From Macrostomum hystrix (Eukaryota > Animalia > Platyhelminthes): a DNA stretch of 64,000 nucleotides. The notes beneath the pieces were generated by a model, which was not told the DNA's origin, did no database searches, and saw only the letters and a list, made by a program, of their open reading frames with translations. Location: the NCBI GenBank assembly GCA_950097015.1, contig CATNEN010000029.1, positions 1,116,001-1,180,000 on the forward strand, in the 5' to 3' direction. Position numbers and translations under genes: made by a program. This document shows, piece by piece, positions 19,551 to 39,117 of this stretch; position 1 is the first letter of the stretch; each line of letters begins with the position of its first letter.

Positions 19551-20849
19551 TCAGCACGAGCAGCCGCCCTGCTGGCCGCCCTGCTGCCCGGAGCCGGCGC
19601 CGCCCTGCAGCTGGATGGCCGGCGGCAGTTCGGAGGCGCCGGCGTCGTCAGCGGCGGCCTCCTGGGCCAGGGCGTCCTTGGCCAGCTGCATGAAGGCGGC
19701 CTCAACGTTGACGGCCTCCTTGGCGCTGCACTCGAAGTAGGGCATGTTGGATTTCGTCTGCGCCCACTGGGCGGCCCGCTTTTTGGTGACGCCGCGGTTC
19801 TCCAGGTCGATCTTGTTGCCAGCCAGCACGAAGGGGAAATTGTCCGGATCCCTGGGGCTGGCCTGGATCAGGAACTCGTCCCGCCAGGAGTCCAGCGTCT
19901 TAAACGAGTTCGGCTGCGTCACGTCGTACACTGCGGGAATTGGCGGCGTGCGGGGATTCTTCGAAACTGATAGGTAATTTTTGGAAACTGTGAGTGGTGA
20001 TTCCCGGAAATGCTGCTAGGTGATTCTTAGAGACTGTGATAGTAATTCCTGGAAACTGTGATAGTAATTCCTGGAAACTGTGATAGTAATTCCTGGAAAC
20101 TGTGATAGTAATTCCTGGAAACTGTGATAGTAATTCCTGGAAACTGTGATAGTAATTCCTGGAAAACGATAGTGATTCCCAGAAATGCTGATAGGTGATT
20201 CTTGGAAATGCTGATAGGTGATTCCCGGAAATGCTGATAAGTGATTCCTGGAAACTGTATTAGTAATTCCTGGAAACTGATGGTGATTCCTGGAAACTGT
20301 GATACGTAACTCCTTGAAAATGATAGGTAATTCCCGAAAACTGTGATAGTAATTCCTGGAAACTGCAATTAGGGTTTTTAGCTCGCAGGTTGGGGATTTT
20401 TATAATTCGGGTTGGTGACAGTCTTGGAAACTAGGATTATAATTCTTGGAAACTGGGATTCAGATTTCTTTCAATCTGGGATAGTGACTCTTGATTGGTA
20501 TTGACGATACGCTCGAGAATACGCATAGAGTGTTGCAAGAAACAAGAAGGGTTGGAATGTCCTAGAAAATTTCTGTTGGCTCACCCAGCATGCAGGCATC
20601 GGCACCGCGGTAGAAGGCCACGCCAAGGGACTGGAATCGCTCCTGACCGGCGGTGTCCCACAGCTGCAGGGTGACCACCCGGTCATCTACCATCAGCTCC
20701 TTGGTGAGGAAGTCAGCCCCAATGGTGGCCTTGTACTGGTTGCTGAACTTGCGGTTAACAAACTGGTTCATCAGGGAGGTCTTGCCGACACCGGAGTCGC
20801 CAAGGATGATCACCTTGAGCAGGATTTTCTTGCGGCTGGCGCTGGACAT
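19551..20849 (-). CDS. RAB7: Rab7 small GTPase, 214 aa, 2 coding exons
   Basis: Exons 20849-20585 and 19930-19551 (phase-1 GT-AG intron). [37 protein letters not shown]-terminal CSC prenylation motif. Confidence 0.95.
19985..20365. repeat. 22-bp minisatellite in the Rab7 intron
   Basis: Unit GTAATTCCTGGAAACTGTGATA. Confidence 0.85.
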
Positions 20850-24536: not shown

Positions 24537-25689
24537 TTAACAAGCTCCGCAGGTTTTACTATTTTGCGCAGCGTCGCTACTAGAATTGTGGCCATCTGTT
24601 TCGCTATTGTGCAACTGCAGCACAACACCCGGCGGGGCGCCAAGCGATTCGGTTCGATCCGAGGCAATTTTTCGCGCCAAAGCCAAATTAGCCAAGTGAT
24701 GAAATGCGTCGGCCACATTGATAGCCTGCTTAGCGGAGCATTCCAAGTAAGGCATGCCGAGATGGCTCACGCACCATCGCCTGGCAGCGTCCGGCTGAAC
24801 GCAACGGTGCTCCAGGTCCACCTTGTTGCCAATTAGCATAAATGGAAAACTGTCGGCGTCGCGTATCTGCGCCTCCAGCGTAAACTCTTCCAGCCAGGAG
24901 GTCAGCGAAGCGAAGCTTAGCTGGTCGGTGACGTCATACACTGGGGTGGATGAGACGCGACACTATTACTGCTGGGCAATTCTGAGCATATAGCGGAGCA
25001 GTCTAATAAAATATCCCCTTCTGAGCAGTATGTTCATTGTTACTTTAAACAGCCTATTCAATCACAATTCAAGCAGTCAATTCAATGACATCTTAGAACT
25101 CGATATAAAGACAATATGAGCAGGCAATTATTGACACATTGAGCAGTTAAAATAAAACAAAAATCGAGCAGTCAATTCAATGACAACTTGAGCAGTCAAA
25201 AAAGGACAGTTTGAGCAGTCAATTTAATGACAACTTGAGCAGTCAAAAAAGGACAATTTGAGCAGTCTACAATAAAGACAACTTGAGCAGTCGATTCCAA
25301 GACTTTGAGCAGTCGATTCCAAGACTTTGAGCAGTCGATTCCAAGACTTTGAGCAGTCGATTCCAAGACTTTGAGCAGTCGATTCCACGACTTTGAGCAG
25401 TCAGTCTATTCTACTCAAATGACTCACCTAGCAAACAGGCGTCGGCGCCGCGGAAGAAGGCCCGACCAAGCGATCTGAATCGCTCCTGGCCGGCGGTGTC
25501 CCACAGCTGCAAGGTGACAATTTGTCTCTCGAGCTGCACCATTTTAACTAGAAAATCAGCCCCGATTGTGGCCGTATACTGGCCAGTGAACCGTCGATTA
25601 ACATATTGGTGAAGTAGGGAAGTCTTGCCAGCTCCAGCGTTGCCTAGGATGACAACTTTTAGCACGGTGTGCTGCAGAGTCTGCGACAT
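24537..25689 (-). CDS. Rab7-like GTPase (divergent tandem paralog), 221 aa, 2 coding exons
   Basis: Exons 25689-25428 and 24940-24537; same phase-1 intron position as Rab7. [36 protein letters not shown]; ends CGAC. Confidence 0.9.
25140..25400. repeat. 22-bp tandem repeat in the Rab7-like intron
   Basis: Unit TTGAGCAGTCGATTCCAAGACT with degenerate left part. Confidence 0.8.
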
Positions 25690-25919: not shown

Positions 25920-26570
25920 ATCTCCCAGATCTCCCACCTGTCATATCCCAGATCTCCCACCTGTCATATTCCAGATCTCCCACCTGTCATATTCCAGATC
26001 TCCCACCTGTCATATCCCAGATCTCACACCTGTCATATCCCAGATCTCACACCTGTCATATCCCAGATCTCCCACCTGTCATATCCCAGATCTCCCACCT
26101 GTCATATCCCAGATCTCCCACCTGTCATATCCCAGATCTCCCACCTGTCATATTCCAGATCTCCCACCTGTCATATTCCAGATCTCCCACCTGTCATATC
26201 CCAGATCTCCCACCTGTCATATCCCAGATCTCCCACCTGTCATATCCCAGATCTCCCACCTGTCATATTCCAGATCTCCCACCTGTCATATTCCAGATCT
26301 CCCACCTGTCATATTCCAGATCTCCCACCTGTCATATTCCAGATCTCCCACCTGTCATATCCCAGATCTCCCACCTGTCAAATTCCAGATCTCCCACCTG
26401 TCATATTCCAGATCTCCCACCTGTCATATTCCAGATCTCCCACCTGTCATATTCCAGATCTCCCACCTGTCAAATTCCTGATCGCCCACCTGTCATATTC
26501 CAGATCTCCCACCTGTCATATCCCAGATCTCCCACCTGTCATATTTCAGATTTCCCATTTAAAATATTCC
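25920..26570. repeat. 23-bp minisatellite
   Basis: Unit TCCCAGATCTCCCACCTGTCATA. Confidence 0.95.
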
Positions 26571-27079
26571 AGATCTCATTGAAAAATTAAACCTTTTACA
26601 AAGAAAATAACTAAAACAAAATGGACTCATAGAAAATAGACAGTGCATCAGGATCGGCCTAAATAGAGAAATGATTTTATTTTTATCGATACAATTTCCT
26701 TAACAATTGTTAACAAAATACACAACACACTGCTGTCAGTAGCTGGCTTGGGTGACAGGTCAATCTACCAGACATCTACCAGACAATCTACCGGGCTTGT
26801 GGCGGCTTGCAACGGGCACTAATTTTAAGACTAATCGCCATTTAAAAATTCTATGATGCATCGAGCAAAATACTCGCTGCAAATCAAGCTACTTACAGTA
26901 GTTTAATTTAAAAGTACAATTACAACAATGGGATTAGCCACTGCTGGAGAGTTGTGACCGCCATTATTTCTTAGGACAAATCAAGGCCAAAATTTTAAAT
27001 ACTAACAAAAATTTTTCAAGCATTATAAATAGTAAGCTATTCGATCTTAGCTATTCTACAAATACTAATTATAGGCTTA

Positions 27080-27535
27080 TAATATTCGAAATCCCAGATT
27101 CCGGATTCGAAATCCCAGATTCCGGATTTGAAATCCCAGATTCCGGATTCGAAATCCTAGATTCCGGATTTGAAATCCCAGATTCCGGATTCGAAATCCC
27201 AGATTTCCGGATTTGAAATTCCAGATTCCGGATTCGAAATCCCAGATTTCCGGATTCGAAATCCCAGATTTCCGGATTCGAAATCCCAGATTTCCGGATT
27301 CGAAATCCCAGATTTCCGGATTCGAAATCCCAGATTTCCGGATTTGAAATTCCAGATTCCGGATTCGAAATCCCAGATTTCCGGATTCGAAATCCCAGAT
27401 TTCCGGATTCGAAATCCCAGATTTCCGGATTCGAAATCCCAGATTTCCGGATTCGAAATCCCAGATTTCCGGATTCGAAATCCCAGACTCCATATTCGAA
27501 ATCCCAGATTCCGGATTCGAAATCCTCGATTCCGG
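27080..27535. repeat. 21-22-bp minisatellite
   Basis: Unit CGAAATCCCAGATTTCCGGATT. Confidence 0.95.
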
Positions 27536-27683
27536 ATCAACAATCTTTTATTCCTGTCATATAAAACTGGATCATGGCTTTTTCAAATTCTATGTTCCGG
27601 TTTCTAAGAGTTGAACAATAAAGTCACTGAAAAATAAGTGGAACAAACACTACAAAAGCAACCAGGAAAAGCATCAGAATCGA

Positions 27684-30600
27684 TCACCCGCCAGAAGGAT
27701 CCCGACCGCAAAAGCGCCTGTAGGCCTCTACAAAGCTGTGCCCGCTGTCCGGCTGCAGGAAGCTATCAGCAAATCTGGCGCCCATATCGTCATCGCCGCC
27801 GGTTGTCTTCGCCGATGTCAAAACGCCGACCGCGTCCATTGCCAGCATCGTGTTGAACAGTCGGTCAACAGCCGATTCTCTAAAGCCCGGCATGCCAAAG
27901 ATGTCCAAAGCGGAGCAGGGCCACTCGTCGTCTGGCAGATCGGGCTGGAAGAATGGCAGATAATCCTTGCCTAGAGAGATCTGGGCCCTCTGCCAGTTGG
28001 CGTCAGTGCACCACATCTCAATAGCGTATGCGGCCCGATAGCAGATTTTGAGCAGATCCATAGCCCGCTGTCCAATCAGCAGTTCCGACAATGCCGGCCA
28101 ATCAGGTTGCTGTTGGCAGCCATTGGCCAGGAGTTGCTGAATGGAAGCATCCGGCCATGAGGCTAGGCTGCGCAGCACAGCCGGCAGGAAGTAGGAGCGC
28201 GGTTCCCGCCTGTCAGGCGTCAGGAAAGGTCCCATGGCCGGGTGTCCGGTCAGCTGTTGAAGAGCGACACTTAATTTTTCAGCCATAGCCGCTGAATCTG
28301 TGCAGGCGGCAATTGGCAGATCCCAGGCCTGGTAGGCTAGAGGCAGCTCCTGCTCCTGTTGGTTGCCATTAGCAACGGCGCTATTGCCGACGCCGTAGAG
28401 CCGAGCTAGGCAGCCAGTGCCGCCAAGGAATGGATAGACAATCTGCGGCAAAAAGGAGATGGGGCAGGGGCTATTGCTGTCACCACAAGGAGAGAGCATT
28501 TTATGAGCACACACACGCTATAAAGGGTGAGGAGTCTATGAGCACCCAAAGCTATAAACAGTGAGAAGTCTATAGTCTATGAGCACCCAAAGCTATAAAG
28601 GGTGAGGAGTCTATGAGCACCCAAGCTGTAAAGGGTGAGGAGTCTATGAGCACACCAAGCTATAAATGGTGAGGAGTCTATGAGCACACCCAAGCTATTA
28701 AGAGTGAGGAGTCTATGAGCACACCCAAGCTATTAAGAGTGAGGAGTCTATGAGCACACCCAAGCTATTAAGAGTGAGGAGTCTATGAGCACACCAAGCT
28801 ATAAAGGGTGAGGAGTCTATGAGCACACACACGCTATAAAGGGTGAGGAGTCTATGAGCACACCAAGCTATAAAGGGTGAGGAGTCTATGAGCACACCCA
28901 AGCTATTAAGAGTGAGGAGTCTTTGAGCACACCCAAGCTATTAAGAGTGAGGAGTCTATGAGCACACCCAAGCTATTAAGAGTGAGGAGTCTTTGAGCAC
29001 ACCCAAGCTATTAAGAGTGAGGAGTCTATGAGCACACCCAAGCTATAAAGGGTGATAAGAACAAAATTTACCAAGACTTAGAATAAAGACGTTTATGAGC
29101 AAATTTTAAGTTGCGTTTTAAAATGTTTTGTTGATACAAGTAACTGCTCAGAATCGCCAAGAACAGAGGCCTCATAAACTGACCTTGCGCATCCGTCCAC
29201 CGGACAGCCAGACAAGGCGACCCAAAACCGCGCCGCGTCGCAGATCGCGCAAGTCGAATGCTTCGACAGTGTGATGCGGATGCAGTTGGGCAGCTCTGGC
29301 TGTCAGCTGGTCATTTGGCTCGAATGATAGGCCAATCAGTTGCCGGATTAGATCGAACCAGTTCTGCCTTAGCTGGCTCATTGGCACCTTTGGCGGCCAA
29401 TTGTACTCGTACAGCAATCTCCGCTGCCAGTATTCCCAATCCCAGGCCTGAAGCGGTCCGTCAATGAGGCCGCCATTGTCCTGGGCGAAGTCGCAGACCC
29501 GATTGAAATGATCCAGCGCGATTGGCTGGTAGCGACGTTTTAACACTTCTAGTAGGTCCACAACAGACTGCACCGACTGAGGCAGGCCGTCCTGTTTAAG
29601 AAGGGAACCTTCCGGATTTAGCCAATGCCCGCCTACTCCGCTTCTGTTCTCAACTCAATCCGCTTCTGTTCTCAACTCACTCCACTGCTGTTCTGAACTC
29701 ACTCCGCTTCTGTTCTCAACTCACTCCGCTTCTGTTCTCAACTCACTCCACTGCTGTTCTGAACTCACTCCGCTTCTGTTCTCAACTCACTCCGCTTCTG
29801 TTCTCAACTCACTCCACTGCTGTTCTGAACTCAATCCGCTTCTGTTCTCAACTCACTCCACTGCTGTTCTGAACTCACTCCACTGCTGTTCTGAACTCAC
29901 TCCGCTTCTGTTCTCAACTCACTCCGCTTCTGTTCTCAACTCACTCCGCTTCTGTTCTCAACTCACTCCGCTTCTGTTCTCAACTCACTCCACTGCTGTT
30001 CTGAACTCACTCCACTGCTGTTCTGAACTCACTCCGCTTCTGTTCTGAACTCAATCCGCTTCTGTTCTGAACTCACTCCGCTTCTGTTCTGAACTCAATC
30101 CGCTTCTGTTCTCAACTCACTCCGCTTCTGTTCTGAACTCAATCCGCTTCTGTTCTGAACTCACTCCGCTTCTGTTCTCAACTCACTCCGCTTCTGTTCT
30201 GAACTCACTCCACTGCTGTTCTGAACTCACTCCGCTTCTGTTCTCAACTCAATCCGATTCTGTTCTAAACTCAATCCGATTCTGTTCTCAACTCACTCCG
30301 CTTCTGTTCTGAACTCACTCCACTGCTGTTCTGAACTCACTCCGCTTCTGTTCTCAACTCAATCCGCCTCTGTTCTGCTGTCTCACCTGGCCGCACTGTC
30401 TAAGATCGACAGCCACTTTGTTCTCATATCCGAGTGCTTCGCTGAGCGTATCGAACGCAGTCCTCTGGTCGGCAATATTAGTCTGATTATCCAATCGCAT
30501 CGCCGAATGCCGCCTCCTACCGGCTAAGCCGTTGTGCGCTGTCCAGGCGGCCTGCCTTGAAGCCCGATCCCGGCACACCTGCATAAACTCCTCGTACAGT

Positions 30601-32450
30601 CCTGGCGCGAGTGTCAGCACGTACAGGCTATTGTCATTAGTAGATAGCAGATGCTGGAGAAACTCAGGTCTAGTGTAGGGCTCGAATAATTGCGGATCGC
30701 TTATCGCCATGCGATAGAAGCTGCCCGTAGTTGCTACATTGGTCTCAAATCTGGCCTGCAATTCTGCCAGAAGGCGCAGCTGGGTAGCAACGTGAGACAT
30801 CTGCTTTGGAGGCTGGCTGACTGTGCTATCATAGAAACTGGCTCTGCGGCATTCGCGAATCTCTTTGTTCACCACCCAGATCTGCTGGTCCGTGAGGGCT
30901 GCAGAAAAACATAACATTGTTTACGGAGGAAGATTTGATTCCTTAAGTTTTTCTATACATAATCACACTAACGAGTCCTAAAGTACTGATTAGATGACGA
31001 AGCATTAAACTACATAATATAAGGCATAGTTACTCGAATTGTTTACCCTACTTGTATCGGCCCCACTAGGTCACTACGCACAGCCGCAGCTATTGCGCGG
31101 CGCATCTTAAGGTTGCGTACGGCAGTTCAGTCCATGGACTGGGGGGACGCCACACCCACACCCAAATTATCCCAGCTAATGCTGGTACCCATTAAACAGC
31201 TCGATGAACTGAAGCATTGTAGATTTAAGTGTCAAAAAAATGTTCCAGTGGAGCGAGAATCGAACCCCCGAATTTCAAGTCGTGAGTCCAACACTTTAAC
31301 CACGGGGCTACAACATTTAAATATATGTGAAATTATCATTCAAGTAGTAAATTAAAGGATTCATAAACGACAAGAGTACTCACACTTGTCCAAATTGCGC
31401 ACCCTCACTAGGCAGGCCAGATAGTCCGCATCCTGGTAACACTCTTGCAGATGCATTCGCAGTTTAACTAGCAGGCTATCAACTAGGCGAGCGTGCGAAC
31501 TAACCAGCTCTGTCTGGTCTAGGGTGACAGCTAACTGGCCAGCCCAGATCAGTTCCAATAGGCGGCACCGGTGCTGCAGCAGAGGCTGAATCAGTTGATC
31601 AAAGCTGGCCGCAGCGGACTGGGTGTCGCCCGAATCTGGAGATATAGAGAGACAGAGAACAAGTATATCTAACAGCCAGTAACACAGCCGCAGCTATTGC
31701 GAGACGCATCATTTGGTGAGACTATAGACCAGCAGCCAGCGAGGAGGCAATTCTGCTTATTTCGATGACTCCTGAGCACACACTCACACAAGTGTGTACA
31801 TCTGCCCTGACTTTCGCATCGTCAGGCAGTGTACCTTGGAGGCTGGCCCTCAGGGGCGTAAATTGCACGACTAACCCTTAAGCCTTCTCACCTCGGCTGC
31901 ACCCCAATTTAATGTGGCCTCGCCGCGGAATCGAGCTCAGGGAGCTTGGTGCGAGAGGCAGAGTACGTGTTACCGCTTCGCAACTCACCCTCCCACAAGC
32001 AAGAAATTAGGCTAAATTGAATAATTCATCCTAATTTTTCAACAAAAGACAACTCTTCGCTAGGATAGTTGCATTACCAGCCACTGCAGCATCCAGTAGC
32101 TGATCGTGCAGTGTGGCACTAGCCTGCAGTTCGCGGTGCACTTTGTCGTAGTAAGCTAGCCAATCGATGCCATCCGATAGAACCAGCCTGCAACCGTTGG
32201 CACTGTCGGTGAATAGGTTCGAGTCTGCCAGATTGTGTCTAGGCACATCCGGTATGCGAATATAGACTGGAACTTCTCGACGCTCATGTCGAAACGCCGG
32301 ATAGACAGTGTCGGGTAGGACGTGCTTCAACCATTGCCTGCCGCCAGCTGAGCTGAGGCATCTGCCGCCAGTGAGAATCAACGGACTTGTCGGGCGCAGC
32401 AGTTGGCTGCAGCCGCTGCACAATAGCAGCTGCTTTGCGGCTCTCAGCAT
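27684..32450 (-). CDS. M3A oligopeptidase A-like protein, 767 aa, probable mitochondrial presequence, catalytic HExxH absent (pseudo-peptidase)
   Basis: Exons 32450-32078, 31635-31384, 30898-30387, 29591-29184, 28442-27684; GT-AG with consistent phases (2304 nt). Collinear M3A-like segments recognised by eye: FDQLIQPL, LTDQQIWVVNKEIRE, FDTLSEALGYEN, LQAWDWEYWQRR, LIRQLIGLSFEP, WPCSALDIF, GARFADSFL...FVEAYRRFCGRDPS. Confidence 0.8.
28500..29055. repeat. 33-35-bp intronic minisatellite
   Basis: Unit AAGAGTGAGGAGTCTATGAGCACACCCAAGCTATT. Confidence 0.95.
29635..30380. repeat. 22-bp intronic minisatellite filling almost the whole intron
   Basis: Unit CCGCTTCTGTTCTCAACTCACT. Confidence 0.95.
31125..31318 (-). 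mobile_element. tRNA-derived CORE-type SINE (family B)
   Basis: Minus strand TAGCCCCGTGG / GGTTCGATTCT boxes, then GACACTTAAATCTACAATGCTTCAGTTCATCGAGCTGTTTAATGGGTACCAG, resembling the CORE domain. Confidence 0.65.
31735..31990 (-). mobile_element. SINE family A copy
   Basis: Reverse complement matches family A. Confidence 0.85.
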
Positions 32451-33009
32451 GTGGCCTGGTTAGGTCCAATTCAGCTGCAGTTAGTATTAGGTACACAATT
32501 TATTTTAGTTTTGTTAGTAATATCAGTTTCTTCTGCCTGTCCAATTCTTTTAAAACAATCAAAAATAGAAAATGTTAGCATTTTATTTTAGTCTATTACT
32601 CTATTAAATGTGATACTTTGATTAAAAATATATAATATTTATAGATTCTACCCTAGAAAGAGTAGAGTAGTGTGTGCAATCCTCCCTAGAGATTGCAAAG
32701 CTAAGCCACTTGAAACTTTTCTGATATCATGCTTATAAAGAATCAATGATAAATAAACACATTTAGAAGTAATTGCTAGCATTTTGCATGTTTAGAACTA
32801 ATTGAAAAGTTATATCTTGAACTAATTTTAAGGTAATACTTAGAAATGAATCACTCAATCCAATATTCTAACTGCATAGTGAATAAACTGCCACAATTAG
32901 TAGACTAAAATGCCAGCTACTAGGATTTTATAATTCTTATAACTTTAATTTTTAGTTTACCAGCTTTTTTATATTTTATTTTAGTTTACCAGGCCTAACC
33001 TAGTTCAGG

Positions 33010-33355
33010 GGAGATTGGCAGAGTAGTTAACTGTTTGCCGCTTGTGCCAAGATCTCTGAGCCCAATTCTGCTGTGAGGCCAGATTCATTTGGGGCACAGC
33101 TTTGGATAGAAGGCTTGGGTGTGTTGTGCAATTGATACCATTTAAGGCAAACCTCCAAGGCACAGTGAGTGTGCACACTGCCAGACAATGAGAAAAAAGG
33201 GCAGATGTACATATCTATGAGTGTGTTCCTGCATAGAGTATCCATGTGCTTGTGTGCTTAAGAGTCAACAGAATGGACAGAATTCCTATTTTTGCTGGCT
33301 ACAAGTCTAGTGTCACCAAATAGTATGCCATTGCCTACAAGCCTCCTATAATAAA
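33010..33355 (+). mobile_element. older, diverged SINE family A copy
   Basis: TTGGCAGAGTAG head and recognisable body (AGGGCAGATGTACA, CTAGTGTCACCAAA). Confidence 0.75.
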
Positions 33356-35259
33356 ACAAATATTGTAAACATACAGCAAAGAATGGATTCTCATTGAAAT
33401 CAGTTTTATCTTCATTAATGATTGAGCTGCCCATAAAACTGATATCAGTATCATCAAAATCATGTCACAATAGCATGTCATATCAAGAGAGCATTAGAGT
33501 TAACCAGAACCCAGAAGCTTAGAAAACTCCCAAAGTGCCAATCTGAATTATACTATATGATAAGCATATAATCCTGTCAATTCATATGACATATTCATAA
33601 TAAAAAAGGTTGATAGCCTGCAAATATCTATATATCATATTGAGATTTCAGAATATAAACCAGACATCACTCATTAGAAGCTTTTAAACTTAGAGCCATA
33701 TTATAATAATATTAATATTACTGCTTTGTAGTCTAGTTTGGTGCTTAAATTGACCAAAAAATACATTTTTTTGCATAATAGGCCTAACCTAAGCCTTGAA
33801 CAAAAGTATAGCTTTTTGCCAATCTTCTTATTTTATGTTAAGGTATAAAAGCTTATGAATGGTTGCTTTTCAGACAAAGACTTGGTCTTGGCTTAAATGG
33901 CAGTGGCAGGCCTATTTATTTGCAGTTTTGATACCATGGCATAAGATTACATTATACATTAAAACCAGGACAATCATATTTTACTACTAGGCCCACCCAA
34001 CTTAGTTTTTTGTTTAAATTAGGCCTAGCATTTTCTCTCACATCTTAGATGCCTTAATCTCCATCTCATATACTAAGATTATAATAATTTTCCCTACCAA
34101 AAACTACATTCTAATCTAATATAAGGTTCAATTAAAAACTATGGGAATCAAATTATTATCAAGCACAATTTTCTATCATTTCCTAATTCCTCAGACATTA
34201 TTTTATAATAAAGAACTCTAAAAATACAAAGTTTTTTAATAATACTAAAAAGGAATTTAGTTTAATTTAAGTAAAATAGTTAAGGTAGGCTTATTATTTC
34301 CTAGAAAAATTGTATATATGAACAGTGCAGGCTACATACAAAAAGATAAATGTTGACTTTTTTGTTTGAATACTTTAGTTTACATATGGGTGATACTGAT
34401 AGGGGCATGATAATAGGAACTTTTTGAATAAAAAGGACCCATTTTACTTCTGGATTTACATATTGGTTTAGTAAAAACATAATTTATCGAAGTCACAAAC
34501 ATACTGTAGTTATGAATATATGGGCAGCCGGTCGCAATATACGTTGTTACCCTAGCAAATAAATAAATCGGCTTTGTCCATAACTTCAAAAGCATAAAGT
34601 TAGGCATGTTGTAGTAGCAATAAAGGACGGCAAATGCTTTCTGAGAATAAGCTACCCCTGCTGAAAAGGATTTTTTATAGATTTTTGTGCGGTCGCATCA
34701 CATCAGCATTTTTGTGTTTGTTATATTTTACGTTACGCATTATAAAGGCCTAGGACCAAGAAGGACGGGACACTTCGTTTCTTGATAAATTTATTAAAGC
34801 AGAGTTTCACAAAAATGCACTAGCGAGATAGAACTATTCAAATTTTTCACATCAAAATGTTTATAACTTTTCATAAGAAGAATATCCCATGAAGAAAATT
34901 TAATGCTGTTCTTTTGAGATATATCTTAATTTGCAACATATGTTGCTTCAACGAACTTCAGAAAGCTTTGTTCATGAACAACTGATCTTATTTTTATTTT
35001 CCTTCATGTATCATGAAGTCCAATAGCAACCAATCAGACATAAATTTTGCCTATAGTTTGGCCTACTGATTTGTTGATGAAAAAATTCGACAAAGTTCTC
35101 GAAATTTACTTGATTTAGAAAGTGACTGTAAAGTTGAGTAAGTCACGAGATAGCCTATAGCTATTGGCTTACTATTTTGCCTCATGATAAACTGCAAATC
35201 TATTAAAACAAGCTCGACTTTTATCTTCAAAAAACTTCAAAAAACATAAGGGCAAGGGC

Positions 35260-36560
35260 GGACTCTGCGGAAAGGTTGGGCATCTGAAGGCCGTGTGCAG
35301 AAGCGGTGGAAATTCTCTGACAAAGAGCTGTGTTCCATCAGTGCAGTTACTGGTAAGACACCTGAACCTGATGACTATGATAATGTTCTTATCGTTGGCG
35401 GCGAACGGTTCAAAGGGCAGGTGGTCAACTCACGTTCAAATGTTGTTGGACACGGGTCTGACGTTTCACAGCTGTCCCTTGCTGAATTCAGTCAGCTGAA
35501 GGAGCACGCCAATAGAGACCAGAAAACTCGCAGGTTCAATGATTATAACGGCAATGATATTGGCCTGTTAGGTGTCTCACATGTCAGTGTAGTTTATAGA
35601 GAATTCAGCTGTATATAGTGATATCAGGCGGCACTATTTTAGTATTGATTGGCTCGATGCTACAGATGCTGAGCAACTGCAGGTGAGAGTTGCATCATCA
35701 CCAGCTAAAGTGTCAATCACATTGGCTGATGGCACTAAGCCAATTTTCTGCAAACCACGAGCTGTTCCATTTGCCACCCGGGACCAAGTGAAGGAAGAAC
35801 TCGACAATCTGGAGAAAGAAGGCAAGATAACCAAAGTGGACGACAGTTCACTGGGCAACGTCACTCTGAATGACCATCTGAACAGGATGGTCACAATTAC
35901 TGCGGCAGAAGATGACATTTTTGCTGAGCTGCATGGCTCAAAGATATTTTGTACTTTGGACTTGACAAATGCCAATCTGCAGTTACCACTTCAGTATGTA
36001 TAAGTCTTCCAAGTTGATAACAATTTCAACACATTTTGGACTTTTCCGATAAAACTTCCTAACGTTCGGAATCAAGCAGTGCCATCTTTCAAAGTTTCAT
36101 GGATCGAATTCTGTTTGGCATGAAAAATGTGCATTCCTATCAGGATGAAATACTAGTGCATGGAAAGGATAAGCAAAGTCATGATCAGCAGCTAAATGCC
36201 GTTCTGAACGGACTGAAAGAGCACAGTCTGACGGTGAACATGGAGAAGGCACAATTGGACAGCTAGAGGTGGAGTTTCTGGGATTTCTGATTAACAAGCA
36301 AGGAATTCGACCAACCCGAAGAAACTTGATGTCACATTGCAATTCAAGGAACTAACAAATGCAGCTCAATTGCGATCCTTCATTGGCATGATGGAGTTTT
36401 ATTCTAATTTTCAGCCAAACCTCTCGGAAGTGAAGGAACCACTGAGTCAGCTACTCAGGCAGAACACACGTTGGACATGGCAAGCAAGTCAGAAGCAAGA
36501 CCTTGAAAAGCTGAAGCAAATGCCAGCTAGAAGCAACACCATTGAAGCCATTCAATCCAA
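35260..36560 (+). mobile_element. decayed Ty3/Gypsy LTR-retrotransposon gag-pol relic
   Basis: Zinc knuckle CGKVGHLKAVC (35266), protease LLDTG (35449), RT segments KPRAVPF, IFCTLDL, YQDE in place of YxDD (36138), VEFLGF, LRSFIGM; many frameshifts and stops; no integrase or LTR seen. Confidence 0.85.
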
Positions 36561-37332
36561 GCGACAGGTTATCACGCTTGACATGTGCTGCTTCCTCCAA
36601 CCTCTGGAAGCCCACTCGAATCCACCAGCCATGGAGGCAGAACAAGAGGTCAAGCCTTTACCGCCTTATTCTCAAACTCACAGACTGTATATAATTCTTG
36701 AACGCTTACGAGTGCTTTGGCCATAGACGCACGAGTAAGCGTTCATGAATTTCATTCTTATTAGAGCCATTCTAACCATAGACAAAATTAATATTAATAA
36801 TAAAGTGTGGAGGGAGGAAAGAGAGAGGGTTAAAAATGAATCAAATACATATAAATAAATTGTTTGCGTGCAGGAACGGAGAGTGTCATTCCTGCACGAT
36901 GTCCATGTGTAAAACAGTGGAGATTTTGGCCATAGATTATTTCATTCCCGCACGCTGGCTCAAATAAGACTGAGTCTGCCGAAAGACTAAATAAATTTCA
37001 CTAATGGCTAAAAATGTTAAATTGTATAATATCTGGCTCTGAATAGCACTCCATTCTATACTTTCCTCCATGCCTCTACCACGAAGTAAGTTCTGCGGAA
37101 TTGAGAGCCGAGCAAAATGCAGCACGTGTAATTTATTGCCTTTTTGCAACTTCTTCACACAAGCAACGTATTACGTATAAACCTGGAAATACGACCATAA
37201 GCTGCAAGAAATGCAATTAGCATTTCATAAATGAAAGCGAGCTCAGATTTAACTTTTGAGTCTGCTAACATTCCACAAGAGAATCTAAAATTGATTGAAC
37301 AGCGAAAGAACTCAGGACAAGTATCGGTCGGC

Positions 37333-39117
37333 ATGCTGCACATATATTTACCAGCTTCTCGACTTTTAAGTGTAAGGCATAACTTGATAAATGCCAAATG
37401 CAATTAGTTTGTTGAAAAATTAATTACTTTAAATATTTTTCCAGCTCAGATGCAAGTCTTATTGCCTGAGAGCATTGTTGGTTGCTGTCGGCATTGTGAT
37501 CCTGATCTCCGTCAGACGAATAGACCGATCGACATTCGTTCAGCGCATAGTTTACAGCATGAGATCAACAGCGAGCGATGCCCGGCGCCTGCCAGCCCTA
37601 CCCACTGTCGAGTTCTACATTCAAGCTTTGAATTCAGCGACTACTATGCGAAATGACTCGTTTGATCCGCAGATTGACACCAAGGAACTGAAGATTATGC
37701 TCAACCTGCTCTGGACATTTTTAGACCTGTGCGACCAGCGAGGAATTCAGGCCATGCTCTACGGAGGCACATTGCTAGGATCTTATCGGCATCACGGCTT
37801 CATGCCGTGGGATGATGATGTAGACCTGCTGCTGAAGGAGTCGGATCAAGACGCGCTGGAGAGGGCAATCAAGGAGACGTGAGGCTTTGATTATTGCCTT
37901 ATTCATTGTATAGACGAGATACTACAGATGCCATACAGAGGCCTATACTACTACAGATGCAATATATAGCATAAATTTCTGTGTGTTATTGGTGCCACCT
38001 CACGGACCTCACAATGTGCTACTGATGTTACCTTAAAAACTCACAGTGAGCTTAATTCAGATTTCACATTAAAAACCTCACAATGGGCTGATAATTTAAT
38101 CTCCAATAACTGACAGTGCTAATAAAATCACTTCACAGAACTGAGTCGCTGCTTAACTGACTTTCCAGAGTTTACAAACAACTCACAGGCAATTCACGTT
38201 AGTTAATAATAATAATAATAATAATTGCAGGAGGGCTGCAGGCAATGGCACATCATTTGGTGACACTAGACCCGCAGCCAGCGAGAGGGCGAGTCTGCCC
38301 ATTTCGCTGACTCCTGAGCACACACGCACACAGTTGTCACTGCAAGCAGTTGTCACTGCAGGCAGTTGTCACTGCAGGCAGTTGTCACTGCAGGCAGTCG
38401 TCACGCAGTCAGTTGTCTCGCAGTCAATTGTGCGCAGGCAATTGTCGTAGAACCCTATAATCAACCCATTTCGTTTAAACCTATAAATTAGACACAGTTT
38501 ATTTGATCGAATGAATTAACAGCACAATGATGCCTGAAGCTCTCGTAGCTTTGCAACCCGCGCACTCGCACAGGTATCCCGAGCTTCAACTGGCGAAATA
38601 CGGTCGCTGGAAGGTGTGGAATAGAACGGCCTGCATAGCCCGGCCAACAAAATGGGGCTGGCCTTACCTGGATTTATCGTTCTACAGAAGTGCAGGAGAC
38701 GCGTGGATTGTGGACACGGTGCCAGCCTACGGCTACAACTACAGCTATCCGAAGCGCTACACATTTCCCACGCATAAGCGTCCATTCATGGGCCACTGGG
38801 TGGACGCGCCTAGAGATGCCCTGCGGTTTCTCGGCTATGACAAGAATCCCACAGGGAAGTGCATCAGCCTGTACTACTCGCACAAGTACGAGAGCGTTCC
38901 GAAAGCGAAAGTTAGCGCTATCGACTGCGCCGACCTATCAGCCAGCTATCCGTTTGTCATTCGGGTACCGAATGTGGCAGAAAACGTCGCCGGTGGCAGC
39001 GCGATCTTGGAAGCGCTGCGCTTTCATGGCGGCCGGCCAGTCTACACGGTACCAGTTGACGAACCAGTGGAATCCTTCAACATTGACTTCACCATTGTGC
39101 CTTTCGAAAATAATTAG
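37333..39117 (+). CDS. LicD/fukutin-family nucleotidyltransferase-fold type II membrane protein, ~355 aa
   Basis: Exons 37445-37878 and 38523-39117 are solid (phase 2, GT-AG); putative first exon 37333-37371 (ATG...AGT|GTAAGG) is tentative. N-terminal TM ALLVAVGIVILISV; LicD motifs GGTLLGSYRHHGFMPWDDDVDL, WPYLDL, FPTHKRPFMG..VDAPRD. Confidence 0.85.
38205..38335 (-). mobile_element. 3' fragment of SINE family A with (ATT)n tail
   Basis: (AAT)n followed by TGCAGGAGGGCTGCAGGCAATGGCAC on the plus strand. Confidence 0.8.

What the first reader, a model, noticed from the sequence alone, without database searches (positions are those of the whole stretch)
27684..32450. Intact, mitochondria-directed M3A oligopeptidase homolog that has lost its catalytic machinery
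Seen: five in-phase exons give an uninterrupted 767-aa ORF, so this is not a decaying pseudogene. The N-terminus (MLRAAKQLLLCSGCSQLLRPTSPLILTGGRCLSS) is Arg-rich, lacks acidic residues and contains an R-3-type site RCL/SS. No HExxH occurs in my translation. By eye, the segment equivalent to OpdA LFHEFGHGLHHMLT reads MAEKLSVALQQLT, the third-ligand ELPSQ motif reads FLPAV, and the substrate-binding GYYSY reads SAVDR, while flanking structure (CS..DIF, G.RF...L, F..F.GR.PS) is kept. Established: M3 peptidases need HExxH plus a distal Glu, and dead peptidase folds are reused as mitochondrial structural subunits (M16 core proteins of complex III, M17 S-Lap proteins of Drosophila sperm mitochondria). 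Inference: a mitochondrial pseudo-peptidase acting as scaffold, peptide binder or assembly factor.
Basis: partly seen in the sequence, partly recalled or inferred. Interest (0 to 1): 0.8.

Follow-up and report, generated by a model that had tools for sequence, protein, structure and literature searches.

The report
Dead mitochondrial oligopeptidase homolog, flatworm
This flatworm gene is a real, expressed and well-conserved copy of a zinc peptidase that has lost every residue needed to cut peptides. It belongs to an old animal family of such "dead" enzymes that is already catalogued and whose fruit-fly member (CG11771) was recently shown to matter for mitochondria and male fertility.

Summary
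Five minus-strand exons (32450..27684) splice into an intact 767-aa ORF. Spliced RNA contigs from four runs confirm the junctions, and one contig carries all four.

The protein is an M3A homolog. Exon 4 passes the Pfam Peptidase_M3 threshold. A model of the Macrostomum lignano ortholog superposes on Arabidopsis organellar oligopeptidase.

The catalytic machinery is gone:
- HExxH reads E-K-L-S-V.
- The third zinc ligand Glu is Phe.
- The His of the SHIF motif is Asp.
- GYYSY reads SAVDR.
- No histidine in the C-terminal half is conserved among flatworms.

The gene is under strong purifying selection against its M. lignano ortholog (dN/dS about 0.1). It keeps a basic, acid-free N-terminal extension with a conserved R-3 site.

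It is not a new kind of protein. It falls in a strongly supported clade of HExxH-less animal proteins: flatworms, an annelid and all sampled insects, including Drosophila CG11771. That class is already labelled "M3A non-peptidase homologue" in Schistosoma annotation. A 2026 fly study found CG11771 to be mitochondrial and needed for male fertility and mitochondrial integrity.

My additions are that the clade is OpdA/OOP-type rather than neurolysin-type, that it appears to have a single old origin, and that Macrostomum is its most degenerate yet still constrained member. How it works remains inferred.

The parts
32078..32450 (-). Exon 1 (ATG at 32450-32448; aa 1-124 plus 1 nt), encoding the N-terminal extension
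   Evidence: ORF and GTAATG donor. The 31635|32078 junction is present in contigs of X2, X3 and X5.
32355..32450 (-). Putative mitochondrial presequence, aa 1-32, ending in the R-3 motif R-C-L | S-S
   Evidence: Residues 1-30 hold 4 Lys/Arg and no Asp/Glu; the first acidic residue is at 47. The M. lignano ortholog keeps R-H-L|S-S while the upstream residues diverge. No formal targeting predictor was available.
32244..32267 (-). Clade-specific N-terminal motif V-Y-I-R-I-P-D-V (aa 62-69)
   Evidence: It aligns with Y-Y-L-I-P-E-I of Schistosoma and G-Y-I-V-L-V-P-E-I of insects. It is absent from bacterial and protist active OpdA.
31384..31635 (-). Exon 2
   Evidence: Acceptor ..tccag|ATTCGG and donor AAGT|GTGAGT. 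Both junctions are present in contigs.
30387..30898 (-). Exon 3, where the Peptidase_M3 domain begins
   Evidence: Weak PF01432 hit to profile positions 1-60 (E 0.1). Junctions are in contigs.
29184..29591 (-). Exon 4, the recognisable part of the Peptidase_M3 domain
   Evidence: PF01432 positions 65-184, E 1e-7, 32.1 bits against a cut-off of 27.
27684..28442 (-). Exon 5 (aa 516-767 plus the stop at 27684-27686), the degenerate catalytic half
   Evidence: No Pfam or PDB sequence hit on its own. phmmer over the representative library finds the M. lignano ortholog (1.7e-110) and then other M3 proteins (3e-7 to 2.5e-4). The HMM of other spiralian dead homologs aligns window residues 286-765.
28266..28280 (-). 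Former HExxH, now E-K-L-S-V (aa 570-574)
   Evidence: Aligned columns against HEFGH of active OpdA and Dcp, and the profile alignment to 4KA8.
28176..28193 (-). Former third-ligand motif V-E-L-P-S-Q, now Y-F-L-P-A-V (the Glu is replaced by Phe600)
27855..27920 (-). P-C-S-A-L-D-I-F ... S-A-V-D-R-L-F (aa 690-711). The equivalent of C-x-F-S-H-I-F..G-Y-Y-S-Y-K-W, with the His and all the Tyr residues replaced
27696..27722 (-). Conserved C-terminal M3A motif Y-R-R-F-C-G-R-D-P (aa 756-764)
   Evidence: R, F, G, R and D are nearly invariant across dead and active sequences.
27460..27683 (-). 3' UTR, at least 224 nt, running into the 22-bp tandem array at 27084-27537
   Evidence: X5 contig 20 extends to 27460.
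32451..32475 (-). 5' UTR, with a probable trans-splice acceptor at its 5' end
   Evidence: Contigs of X5 and X1 stop matching the genome at 32475 and carry 22 further letters. The minus strand reads AG at 32476-32475.

Best explanation
The locus encodes the Macrostomum ortholog of an old animal family of catalytically dead oligopeptidase-A / organellar-oligopeptidase-type (M3A) proteins. Drosophila CG11771 belongs to the same family.

Shown here:
- The gene is intact, transcribed, and spliced as modelled.
- It is under strong purifying selection.
- It is homologous to M3A enzymes, and its ortholog models as the M3A fold.
- It groups with the other HExxH-less animal proteins in a tree.
- It has lost both zinc-binding His, the catalytic Glu, the third-ligand Glu, the active-site His and the substrate-contacting Tyr residues.

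Inferred:
- The basic N-terminal extension directs import into mitochondria and is removed at the conserved R-3 site.
- The mature protein folds as the usual two-domain clam shell but cannot hold zinc or hydrolyse peptides.
- It works by binding, either as a regulatory or scaffolding partner of the mitochondrial peptide-processing and quality-control machinery, or as a non-cleaving peptide binder.

In Macrostomum even the canonical peptide-contacting residues are replaced, and the tightest constraint lies in the N-terminal helical domain. A protein-protein (scaffold or regulatory) role therefore looks more likely than canonical peptide binding in this lineage.
For: - Gene model and ORF. All four junctions lie in one 2575-nt contig and in three further runs.
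- M3A homology: PF01432 on exon 4 and on the ortholog.
- Nearest solved structures: the family profile scores E 1e-80 against Arabidopsis OOP 4KA7/4KA8, 4.5e-37 against THOP1, 1e-30 against neurolysin and 2e-20 against Dcp.
- Fold: the ortholog AF2 model has pTM 0.76. Foldseek's top hit is 4KA8 (E 2.5e-20, TM 0.71).
- Ligand loss. No His is conserved among flatworms in the C-terminal half.
- Selection: dN/dS is 0.075-0.156 by four methods, below 0.18 in every 100-codon window, and 0.03 for codons 51-250.
- Gene structure: the M. lignano ortholog has the same five exons and the same intron phases.
- Tree: all dead animal proteins form one clade (100/100). The window protein sits inside the spiralian part (98/96 and 96/93).
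- Local HMM scores for the window protein: other spiralian dead homologs 119.6 bits, insect dead 85.5, active OpdA 40.8.
- N-terminus: a basic, acid-free extension is present throughout the clade and absent in bacteria.
- Literature: CG11771 is described as an M3 non-peptidase homolog. The tagged protein is intramitochondrial. The knockout is viable but male-sterile, with cristae loss and aggregates (PMC13523200).
Against: - No targeting predictor or localisation data exist for the flatworm protein.
- The full spliced window protein could not be given to the remote Pfam, PDB or AlphaFold tools, so the fold was tested on the 75.5%-identical ortholog.
- Exon 5 folded alone gave a poor model (pLDDT 59), and its Foldseek matches were not significant.
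- dS is 1.1-2.2, close to saturation, so the dN/dS value is approximate.
- The Macrostomum branch is very long (2.83), so long-branch attraction could distort its exact position. Its union with the other flatworms is weak (80/28).
- No binding partner or ligand is known for any member of the family.
Confidence: 0.7

Rival explanations
1. The protein is still a peptidase that uses a non-canonical metal site or other catalytic residues.
For: The authors of the fly study leave residual activity open for CG11771. Some insect members keep both His and the third-ligand Glu, for example H-K-F-G-H ... E in Aedes.
Against: In the window protein all three ligand positions are E, V and F, and the catalytic Glu is K. 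Only two His occur after residue 500, and neither is conserved outside Macrostomum. The only conserved Cys/Asp residues (C691, D718, D763) are also conserved in active M3A enzymes, where they are not ligands.
Confidence: 0.04
2. The protein is a dead M3A homolog, but it is not mitochondrial. The N-terminal extension would serve another purpose and the protein would act in the cytosol or elsewhere.
For: Database names for the insect orthologs say 'probable cytosolic oligopeptidase A'. These are automatic names taken from the plant paralog. No predictor was run. The AF2 model shows only that residues 1-97 are disordered.
Against: An acid-free, basic N-terminus is conserved in flatworms and insects but missing in bacterial homologs. 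The R-3 motif is conserved between the two Macrostomum species while the neighbouring residues diverge. Tagged fly CG11771 lies within mitochondria.
Confidence: 0.15
3. It is a transcribed relic, a pseudogene in slow decay without function.
For: The Macrostomum branch is very long (2.83 changes per site). The Pfam model no longer recognises the C-terminal half.
Against: The ORF is intact at 767 and 771 aa in two species whose dS exceeds 1, and dN/dS is about 0.1 along the whole length. Exon structure and intron phases are conserved. The mRNA is correctly spliced. The family is conserved across protostomes.
Confidence: 0.01
4. The flatworm protein lost catalysis independently of the insect proteins. 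The apparent single dead clade would then be an artefact of fast-evolving sequences attracting each other.
For: Which residues replace the ligands differs between lineages. Some insects keep two or three ligands, so the metal site decayed stepwise and separately. The flatworm branches are long.
Against: The dead clade has 100/100 support under a site-heterogeneous model. Its internal split of spiralians against insects mirrors the species tree. No member keeps the catalytic Glu together with both His; Capitella has a Glu in that column but lacks both His. The N-terminal Y-I-x-I-P-E/D motif and the basic extension are shared only by the animal proteins.
Confidence: 0.1

Closest known systems
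Drosophila melanogaster CG11771 and its insect orthologs (MEROPS class 'subfamily M3A non-peptidase homologues', M03.UNA)
   Same: It is in the same clade in the ML tree. It has no HExxH, a basic N-terminal extension followed by the Y-I-x-I-P-E/D motif, and the conserved PCS..IF and FRRFRGRDP motifs. The fly protein is mitochondrial and lacks catalytic residues (PMC13523200).
   Different: Identity is only about 18-20%. Insects keep the Y-Y-S-H-L-W substrate-contact segment, and many keep the second His and the third-ligand Glu; the window protein has lost all of these. Macrostomum also has about 25 extra residues between the presumed cleavage site and the conserved motif, and its N-terminal domain is strongly diverged.
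Schistosoma mansoni 'subfamily M3A non-peptidase homologue (M03 family)' XP_018655556.1, with its schistosome and cestode relatives
   Same: They are flatworm members of the same dead clade. The third-ligand Glu is likewise replaced by an aromatic residue (F or Y), and the MLR... presequence-like start is similar.
   Different: Identity is about 17-21%. Their grouping with Macrostomum inside the spiralian clade is only weakly supported (80/28). The parasite proteins carry extra insertions and C-terminal tails.
Arabidopsis organellar oligopeptidase OOP (PDB 4KA7/4KA8) and bacterial oligopeptidase A
   Same: These are the best sequence-profile and structural matches (E 1e-80; Foldseek E 2.5e-20, TM 0.71). 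They share the two-domain M3A fold and the C-terminal motifs.
   Different: They are active zinc peptidases with HEFGH, the ELPSQ Glu, SHIF and GYYSY, all of which are lost here.
Neurolysin / thimet oligopeptidase (the human orthologs assigned to CG11771 by prediction tools)
   Same: They have the M3A fold (TM about 0.7), and neurolysin is partly mitochondrial.
   Different: The family profile matches them far less well than OOP (4.5e-37 and 1e-30 against 1e-80). The dead clade is therefore OpdA/OOP-type, not THOP/NLN-type. An earlier scan note says the same genome holds a separate thimet/neurolysin-type gene (I did not check this).
Other mitochondrial pseudo-peptidases (MPP-alpha/PMPCA, the complex III core proteins of family M16)
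   Same: The concept is the same: a peptidase fold without catalysis, kept in mitochondria as a binding or regulatory subunit.
   Different: They belong to an unrelated fold and family. For the M3A dead clade no partner has been identified.

Membership tests
Peptidase family M3, subfamily M3A (homology and fold) | Significant match to Pfam PF01432 Peptidase_M3 | tested here: met
   Exon 4 scores 32.1 bits against a cut-off of 27 (E 1e-7), and exon 3 continues the match weakly. The ortholog P0001 scores 53.9 bits. Only the first third or so of the Pfam model is matched.
Peptidase family M3, subfamily M3A (homology and fold) | Two-domain helical clam-shell fold of OpdA, neurolysin and Dcp | tested here: met
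   Tested on the 75.5%-identical M. lignano ortholog, not on the window protein itself. The AF2 model has pTM 0.76. Foldseek top hits are 4KA8, 4KA7, 4PUT, 5LUZ and 1S4B, with E 2.5e-20 to 4e-18 and TM 0.63-0.74.
Active M3A metallopeptidase | HExxH zinc-binding and catalytic motif | tested here: not met
   There is no HExxH or H-x3-H in the protein. The aligned columns read E-K-L-S-V.
Active M3A metallopeptidase | Third zinc ligand, the Glu of the ELPSQ motif about 25 residues after HExxH | tested here: not met
   The aligned residue is Phe600 in Y-F-L-P-A-V.
Active M3A metallopeptidase | Active-site His (SHIF) and substrate-contacting Tyr residues (GYYSY) | tested here: not met
   S-H-I-F aligns with L-D-I-F, and G-Y-Y-S-Y aligns with S-A-V-D-R.
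Animal dead OpdA-type clade (CG11771 family; MEROPS M03.UNA) | Groups with CG11771 orthologs to the exclusion of active OpdA and Dcp sequences | tested here: met
   The ML tree (LG+C20+F+G4 PMSF) gives the dead clade 100/100 and the spiralian subclade holding the window protein 96/93 and 98/96. HMM scores point the same way. THOP, NLN and MIPEP sequences were not in the tree.
Animal dead OpdA-type clade (CG11771 family; MEROPS M03.UNA) | Basic, acid-free N-terminal extension followed by the Y-[IVY]-x-[LI]-x-P-[ED]-[IV] motif | tested here: met
Animal dead OpdA-type clade (CG11771 family; MEROPS M03.UNA) | Mitochondrial location | not testable with these tools
   This is shown only for tagged fly CG11771 (PMC13523200). 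For the window protein it is inferred from sequence features.
Mitochondrial intermediate peptidase (MIPEP / Oct1) | Closest relationship to MIPEP sequences | not tested
   No MIPEP sequence or structure was among the material I could fetch. The family profile's best matches are OOP/OpdA, which argues against a MIPEP origin, but there was no direct comparison.

The most novel reading that the evidence does not exclude
The HExxH-less OpdA-type proteins of flatworms, annelids and insects descend from one ancestor that had already lost catalysis before the split of spiralians and ecdysozoans. This would make them one of the oldest conserved metazoan mitochondrial pseudo-peptidases. The family is mis-assigned in ortholog tables to neurolysin and is absent from the 2024 review of pseudo-peptidases. 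Macrostomum is the extreme case: the whole metal site and the peptide-contact residues are gone, yet constraint is strong. That would mean the conserved function does not need the canonical peptide groove at all, for example as a structural or regulatory subunit of a mitochondrial complex.
Probability: 0.45. Interest if true: 0.55.

Novelty: new member of a known kind. Interest (0 to 1): 0.35.

Why it matters
Pseudo-peptidases of family M3 are absent from the recent review of inactive metallopeptidase homologs (PMC11266112). Only one member, fly CG11771, has any phenotype data, and its mechanism is unknown (PMC13523200).

This work places a flatworm gene in the same old clade. It shows that the clade derives from the presequence-degrading OpdA/OOP type rather than from neurolysin. 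That gives comparative leverage in two ways:
- Residues conserved from insects to Macrostomum despite the loss of the active site mark the surfaces that carry the real function.
- Macrostomum, which can be studied by RNAi and transgenesis, offers a second system to test the link to mitochondria and male fertility.

For genome annotation, the automatic names 'oligopeptidase A' and 'probable cytosolic oligopeptidase A' given to the insect orthologs are misleading.

Tried and rejected
- **Exon 5 alone.** It gave no Pfam hit, no PDB sequence hit and only uninformative ESM Atlas neighbours scoring 0.81. Its homology to M3 became visible only through the representative-library phmmer search and the family profiles.
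- **Exon 5 folded alone.** With a C-terminal alignment the model was poor (pLDDT 59, pTM 0.48). Foldseek matches were not significant (E about 3-5), although M3 chains led the list. I do not count this as evidence.
- **Word-index search with the M. lignano ortholog.** It found only the query itself, because the family is too diverged for shared 5-mers.
- **Taxonomic range.** An Atlas search with Capitella P0005 returned only generic M3 clusters.
- **Intron repeats.** A tRNA-like stretch at about 31240-31310 is not called by ARAGORN, and Rfam has no match in 26500-33500.
- **My first guess of an insect genome.** This was wrong. The nearest ortholog is from Macrostomum lignano, and earlier scan notes also call the genome a Macrostomum.
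- **A diverged MIPEP.** I considered this and set it aside, because the family profile matches OOP/OpdA best. No MIPEP sequence was available for a direct test.
- **Literature.** Searches for 'M3A non-peptidase homologue' and for the M. lignano gene ids found nothing.
- **Limitation.** The spliced 767-aa protein has no single reference. Remote tools therefore saw only exon pieces or the ortholog. The full sequence was used only in local scripts.


Full report
**1. The observation**

The region holds a five-exon gene on the minus strand. The exons are 32078-32450, 31384-31635, 30387-30898, 29184-29591 and 27684-28442, and every intron has GT..AG ends.
- The model is also supported by RNA. Logan contigs laid on 27400-32700 carry joints at exactly these four places. 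One 2575-nt contig of run X5 runs from 32475 to 27460 with all four introns removed. Runs X1, X2 and X3, from a second study, each show two of the junctions.
- The runs are only guessed to be RNA by the tool, but intron-less contigs with canonical junctions are what mRNA gives.
- The introns are filled with tandem arrays (35-bp and 22-bp units) and high-copy repeats.

**2. What the protein is**

Because the spliced product has no single reference, remote tools were given exon pieces.
- Exon 4 matches Pfam Peptidase_M3 positions 65-184 at E 1e-7 (32.1 bits, cut-off 27). Exon 3 continues the match weakly.
- Exon 5, which should carry the active site, matches nothing in Pfam or in PDB sequences.
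- A full phmmer scan of the 1.8-billion-protein representative library with exon 5 found one close relative, P0001 (771 aa, 73% identity, E 1.7e-110). It also found nine weak hits to its last 125 residues. The eight of these that I scanned all carry Peptidase_M3.
- P0001 is a Macrostomum lignano protein. The genome in hand is therefore a macrostomid flatworm, which earlier notes of this scan also say.
- The M. lignano gene has the same five exons with the same intron phases.

**3. Loss of the catalytic machinery**

None of the relatives found has an HExxH, and neither does the window protein.

In a MAFFT alignment of the full window protein with dead and active relatives, the segment F-H-E-F-G-H-x-L-Q-H-x-L-T of active enzymes aligns with M-A-E-K-L-S-V-A-L-Q-Q-L-T. 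The substitutions are:

| Role in active M3A | Active residue or motif | Window protein |
|---|---|---|
| First zinc-binding His | H | E |
| Catalytic Glu | E | K |
| Second zinc-binding His | H | V |
| Third zinc ligand (V-E-L-P-S-Q) | E | F (Y-F-L-P-A-V) |
| Active-site His (S-H-I-F) | H | D |
| Substrate contacts | G-Y-Y-S-Y | S-A-V-D-R |

- The flanking P-C-S..I-F, G-x-R-F..L and R-R-F-x-G-R-D-P motifs are kept.
- The HMM alignment of the family profile to Arabidopsis OOP gives the same equivalences.
- After residue 500 the protein has only two His, and neither is conserved outside Macrostomum. The only potential ligands conserved among flatworms (C691, D718, D763) are also conserved in active M3A enzymes, where they do not bind zinc. 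I see no replacement metal site.

**4. Fold**

- An AlphaFold2 model of the M. lignano ortholog, built with a 60-row alignment, has mean pLDDT 72.4 and pTM 0.76. Residues 1-97 are disordered.
- Foldseek against the PDB ranks Arabidopsis organellar oligopeptidase first (4KA8/4KA7, E 2.5e-20, TM 0.71). TOP2, neurolysin, thimet oligopeptidase and Dcp follow.
- The window's exon 5 folded alone gave a poor model that I do not use.

**5. Selection**

- The window protein and P0001 are 75.5% identical over 756 aligned codons.
- dN is 0.16-0.17 and dS is 1.1-2.2, giving dN/dS of 0.075-0.156 by four methods.
- Every 100-codon window is below 0.18, including the former active site. Codons 51-250, the N-terminal helical domain, are the most constrained at about 0.03.
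- dS is near saturation, so the ratio is approximate. An intact ORF over that divergence rules out a decaying pseudogene.

**6. The family**

- Cluster look-ups show that the weak hits are flatworm proteins from Schistosoma, Heterobilharzia, Spirometra and Sparganum. The S. mansoni member is named 'subfamily M3A non-peptidase homologue (M03 family)'. There is also one Capitella (annelid) fragment and some unlabelled transcripts.
- Searching onward from the least diverged member reached Glossina. From there it reached more than a hundred insect proteins, including 'CG11771' of Drosophila busckii, which are mostly named 'oligopeptidase A' or 'probable cytosolic oligopeptidase A'.
- None of the insect proteins has HExxH at the aligned site. 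Mosquitoes read H-K-F-G-H, termites Q-K-F-G-H and flies K-T-F-G-S.
- In an ML tree under a site-heterogeneous model, rooted on Dcp-like sequences, all these animal proteins form one clade (100/100). It is sister to an active eukaryotic OpdA-like protein and splits into spiralians (96/93) and insects (100/99). The window protein and P0001 sit in the spiralian part on a very long branch of 2.83.
- HMMs built locally give the same order for the window protein: other spiralian dead homologs 119.6 bits, insect dead homologs 85.5, active OpdA 40.8.
- The animal proteins alone share a basic, acid-free N-terminal extension followed by a Y-I-x-I-P-E/D motif.
- The family profile matches OOP far better than THOP1 or neurolysin (1e-80 against 4.5e-37 and 1e-30). 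The clade is therefore OpdA/OOP-type.

**7. Targeting**

- Residues 1-46 carry six Lys/Arg and no acidic residue.
- R-C-L|S-S fits the R-3 cleavage motif, and M. lignano keeps R-H-L|S-S although the residues upstream differ.
- No predictor was available, so import is inferred.

**8. What is known**

- MEROPS-style annotation already has the class 'subfamily M3A non-peptidase homologues' (M03.UNA). It has been used for S. mansoni and for Lucilia (PMC4826915).
- A 2026 study (PMC13523200) calls CG11771 an M3 non-peptidase homolog that lacks catalytic residues, and reports:
  - The tagged protein is uniformly distributed in fat-body mitochondria and unevenly distributed inside muscle mitochondria.
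  - Knockouts are viable but male-sterile. They show transiently elongated mitochondria, loss of cristae, and late-onset aggregates.
  - Loss of the gene promotes polyQ-huntingtin aggregation, and overexpression suppresses it.
  - The mechanism is left open: residual activity or a regulatory subunit.
- The 2024 review of pseudo-peptidases does not mention family M3.

**9. How it most likely works**

Shown: an expressed, constrained M3A-fold protein without a zinc site.

Inferred:
- The protein is imported into mitochondria and its presequence is removed.
- It acts by binding rather than cleavage within mitochondrial peptide processing or quality control.

Insects keep the Tyr-rich peptide-contact segment, so peptide binding is plausible for them. 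Macrostomum has replaced that segment, and its strongest constraint lies in the N-terminal helical domain. I therefore favour a protein-protein scaffold or regulatory role for this lineage.

My probabilities:

| Claim | Probability |
|---|---|
| Dead member of the CG11771 clade | about 0.9 |
| Mitochondrial | about 0.75 |
| Non-catalytic binding role in mitochondrial proteostasis | about 0.6 |

**10. Verdict**

It is, however, a new member of a catalogued family and not a new kind of protein. Two points may be new: the single old origin of the clade and its OpdA/OOP ancestry, and the extreme degeneration of the Macrostomum member. Interest is moderate.

Noticed in passing
window 32451-32480, minus strand: Spliced contigs of two runs (X5 record 20 and X1 record 6) stop matching the genome at 32475 and carry 22 further letters. 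The minus strand has AG at 32476-32475. This looks like a spliced-leader trans-splice acceptor. If the leader ends in AUG, an in-frame TAA at 32462-32460 closes a 5-codon upstream ORF before the gene's own ATG at 32450.
   Followed up: partly
window 28502-29055 (intron 4) and 29635-30376 (intron 3): Two introns are almost entirely tandem arrays: a 35-bp unit of about 14 copies and a 22-bp unit of about 34 copies. The M. lignano ortholog has introns of similar size at the same positions (626 and 1690 nt). I did not compare their content.
   Followed up: no
window 27084-27537: A 22-bp tandem array of about 21 copies lies directly downstream of the gene. The 3' UTR runs into it, since the X5 contig ends at 27460.
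   Followed up: no
window 31078-31160 and 31725-31960 (introns 2 and 1): These are high-copy dispersed repeats. Contig depth there reaches thousands in X5 against 75 for the gene, and many contigs run off into unrelated sequence. A tRNA-like stretch at about 31240-31310 is called by neither ARAGORN nor Rfam.
   Followed up: partly
window 20562-20849 and 25411-25689 plus 24537-24941, minus strand: These are two Rab7-like small GTPase genes or copies (ORFs beginning [25 protein letters not shown].. and [24 protein letters not shown]..), downstream of the finding.
   Followed up: no
window 35683-36726, plus strand: ORF fragments that look retroelement-derived lie upstream of the gene, followed at 37475-39117 by ORFs of an unrelated gene.
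   Followed up: no
L002 (Logan DRR639055 contig, 3247 nt): The least diverged spiralian-type dead homolog, P0002 (600 aa, motif V-H-S-F-G-S), comes from an unlabelled transcriptome contig. A 113-aa ORF just upstream (188-529) may be its N-terminus separated by a frameshift. The organism is unknown.
   Followed up: no
insect orthologs P0108-P0140: Mosquito and some other lower-dipteran members read H-K-F-G-H and keep the third-ligand Glu. They could still bind zinc while lacking the catalytic Glu. Flies have lost both His. The metal site therefore decayed stepwise within the dead clade.
   Followed up: partly
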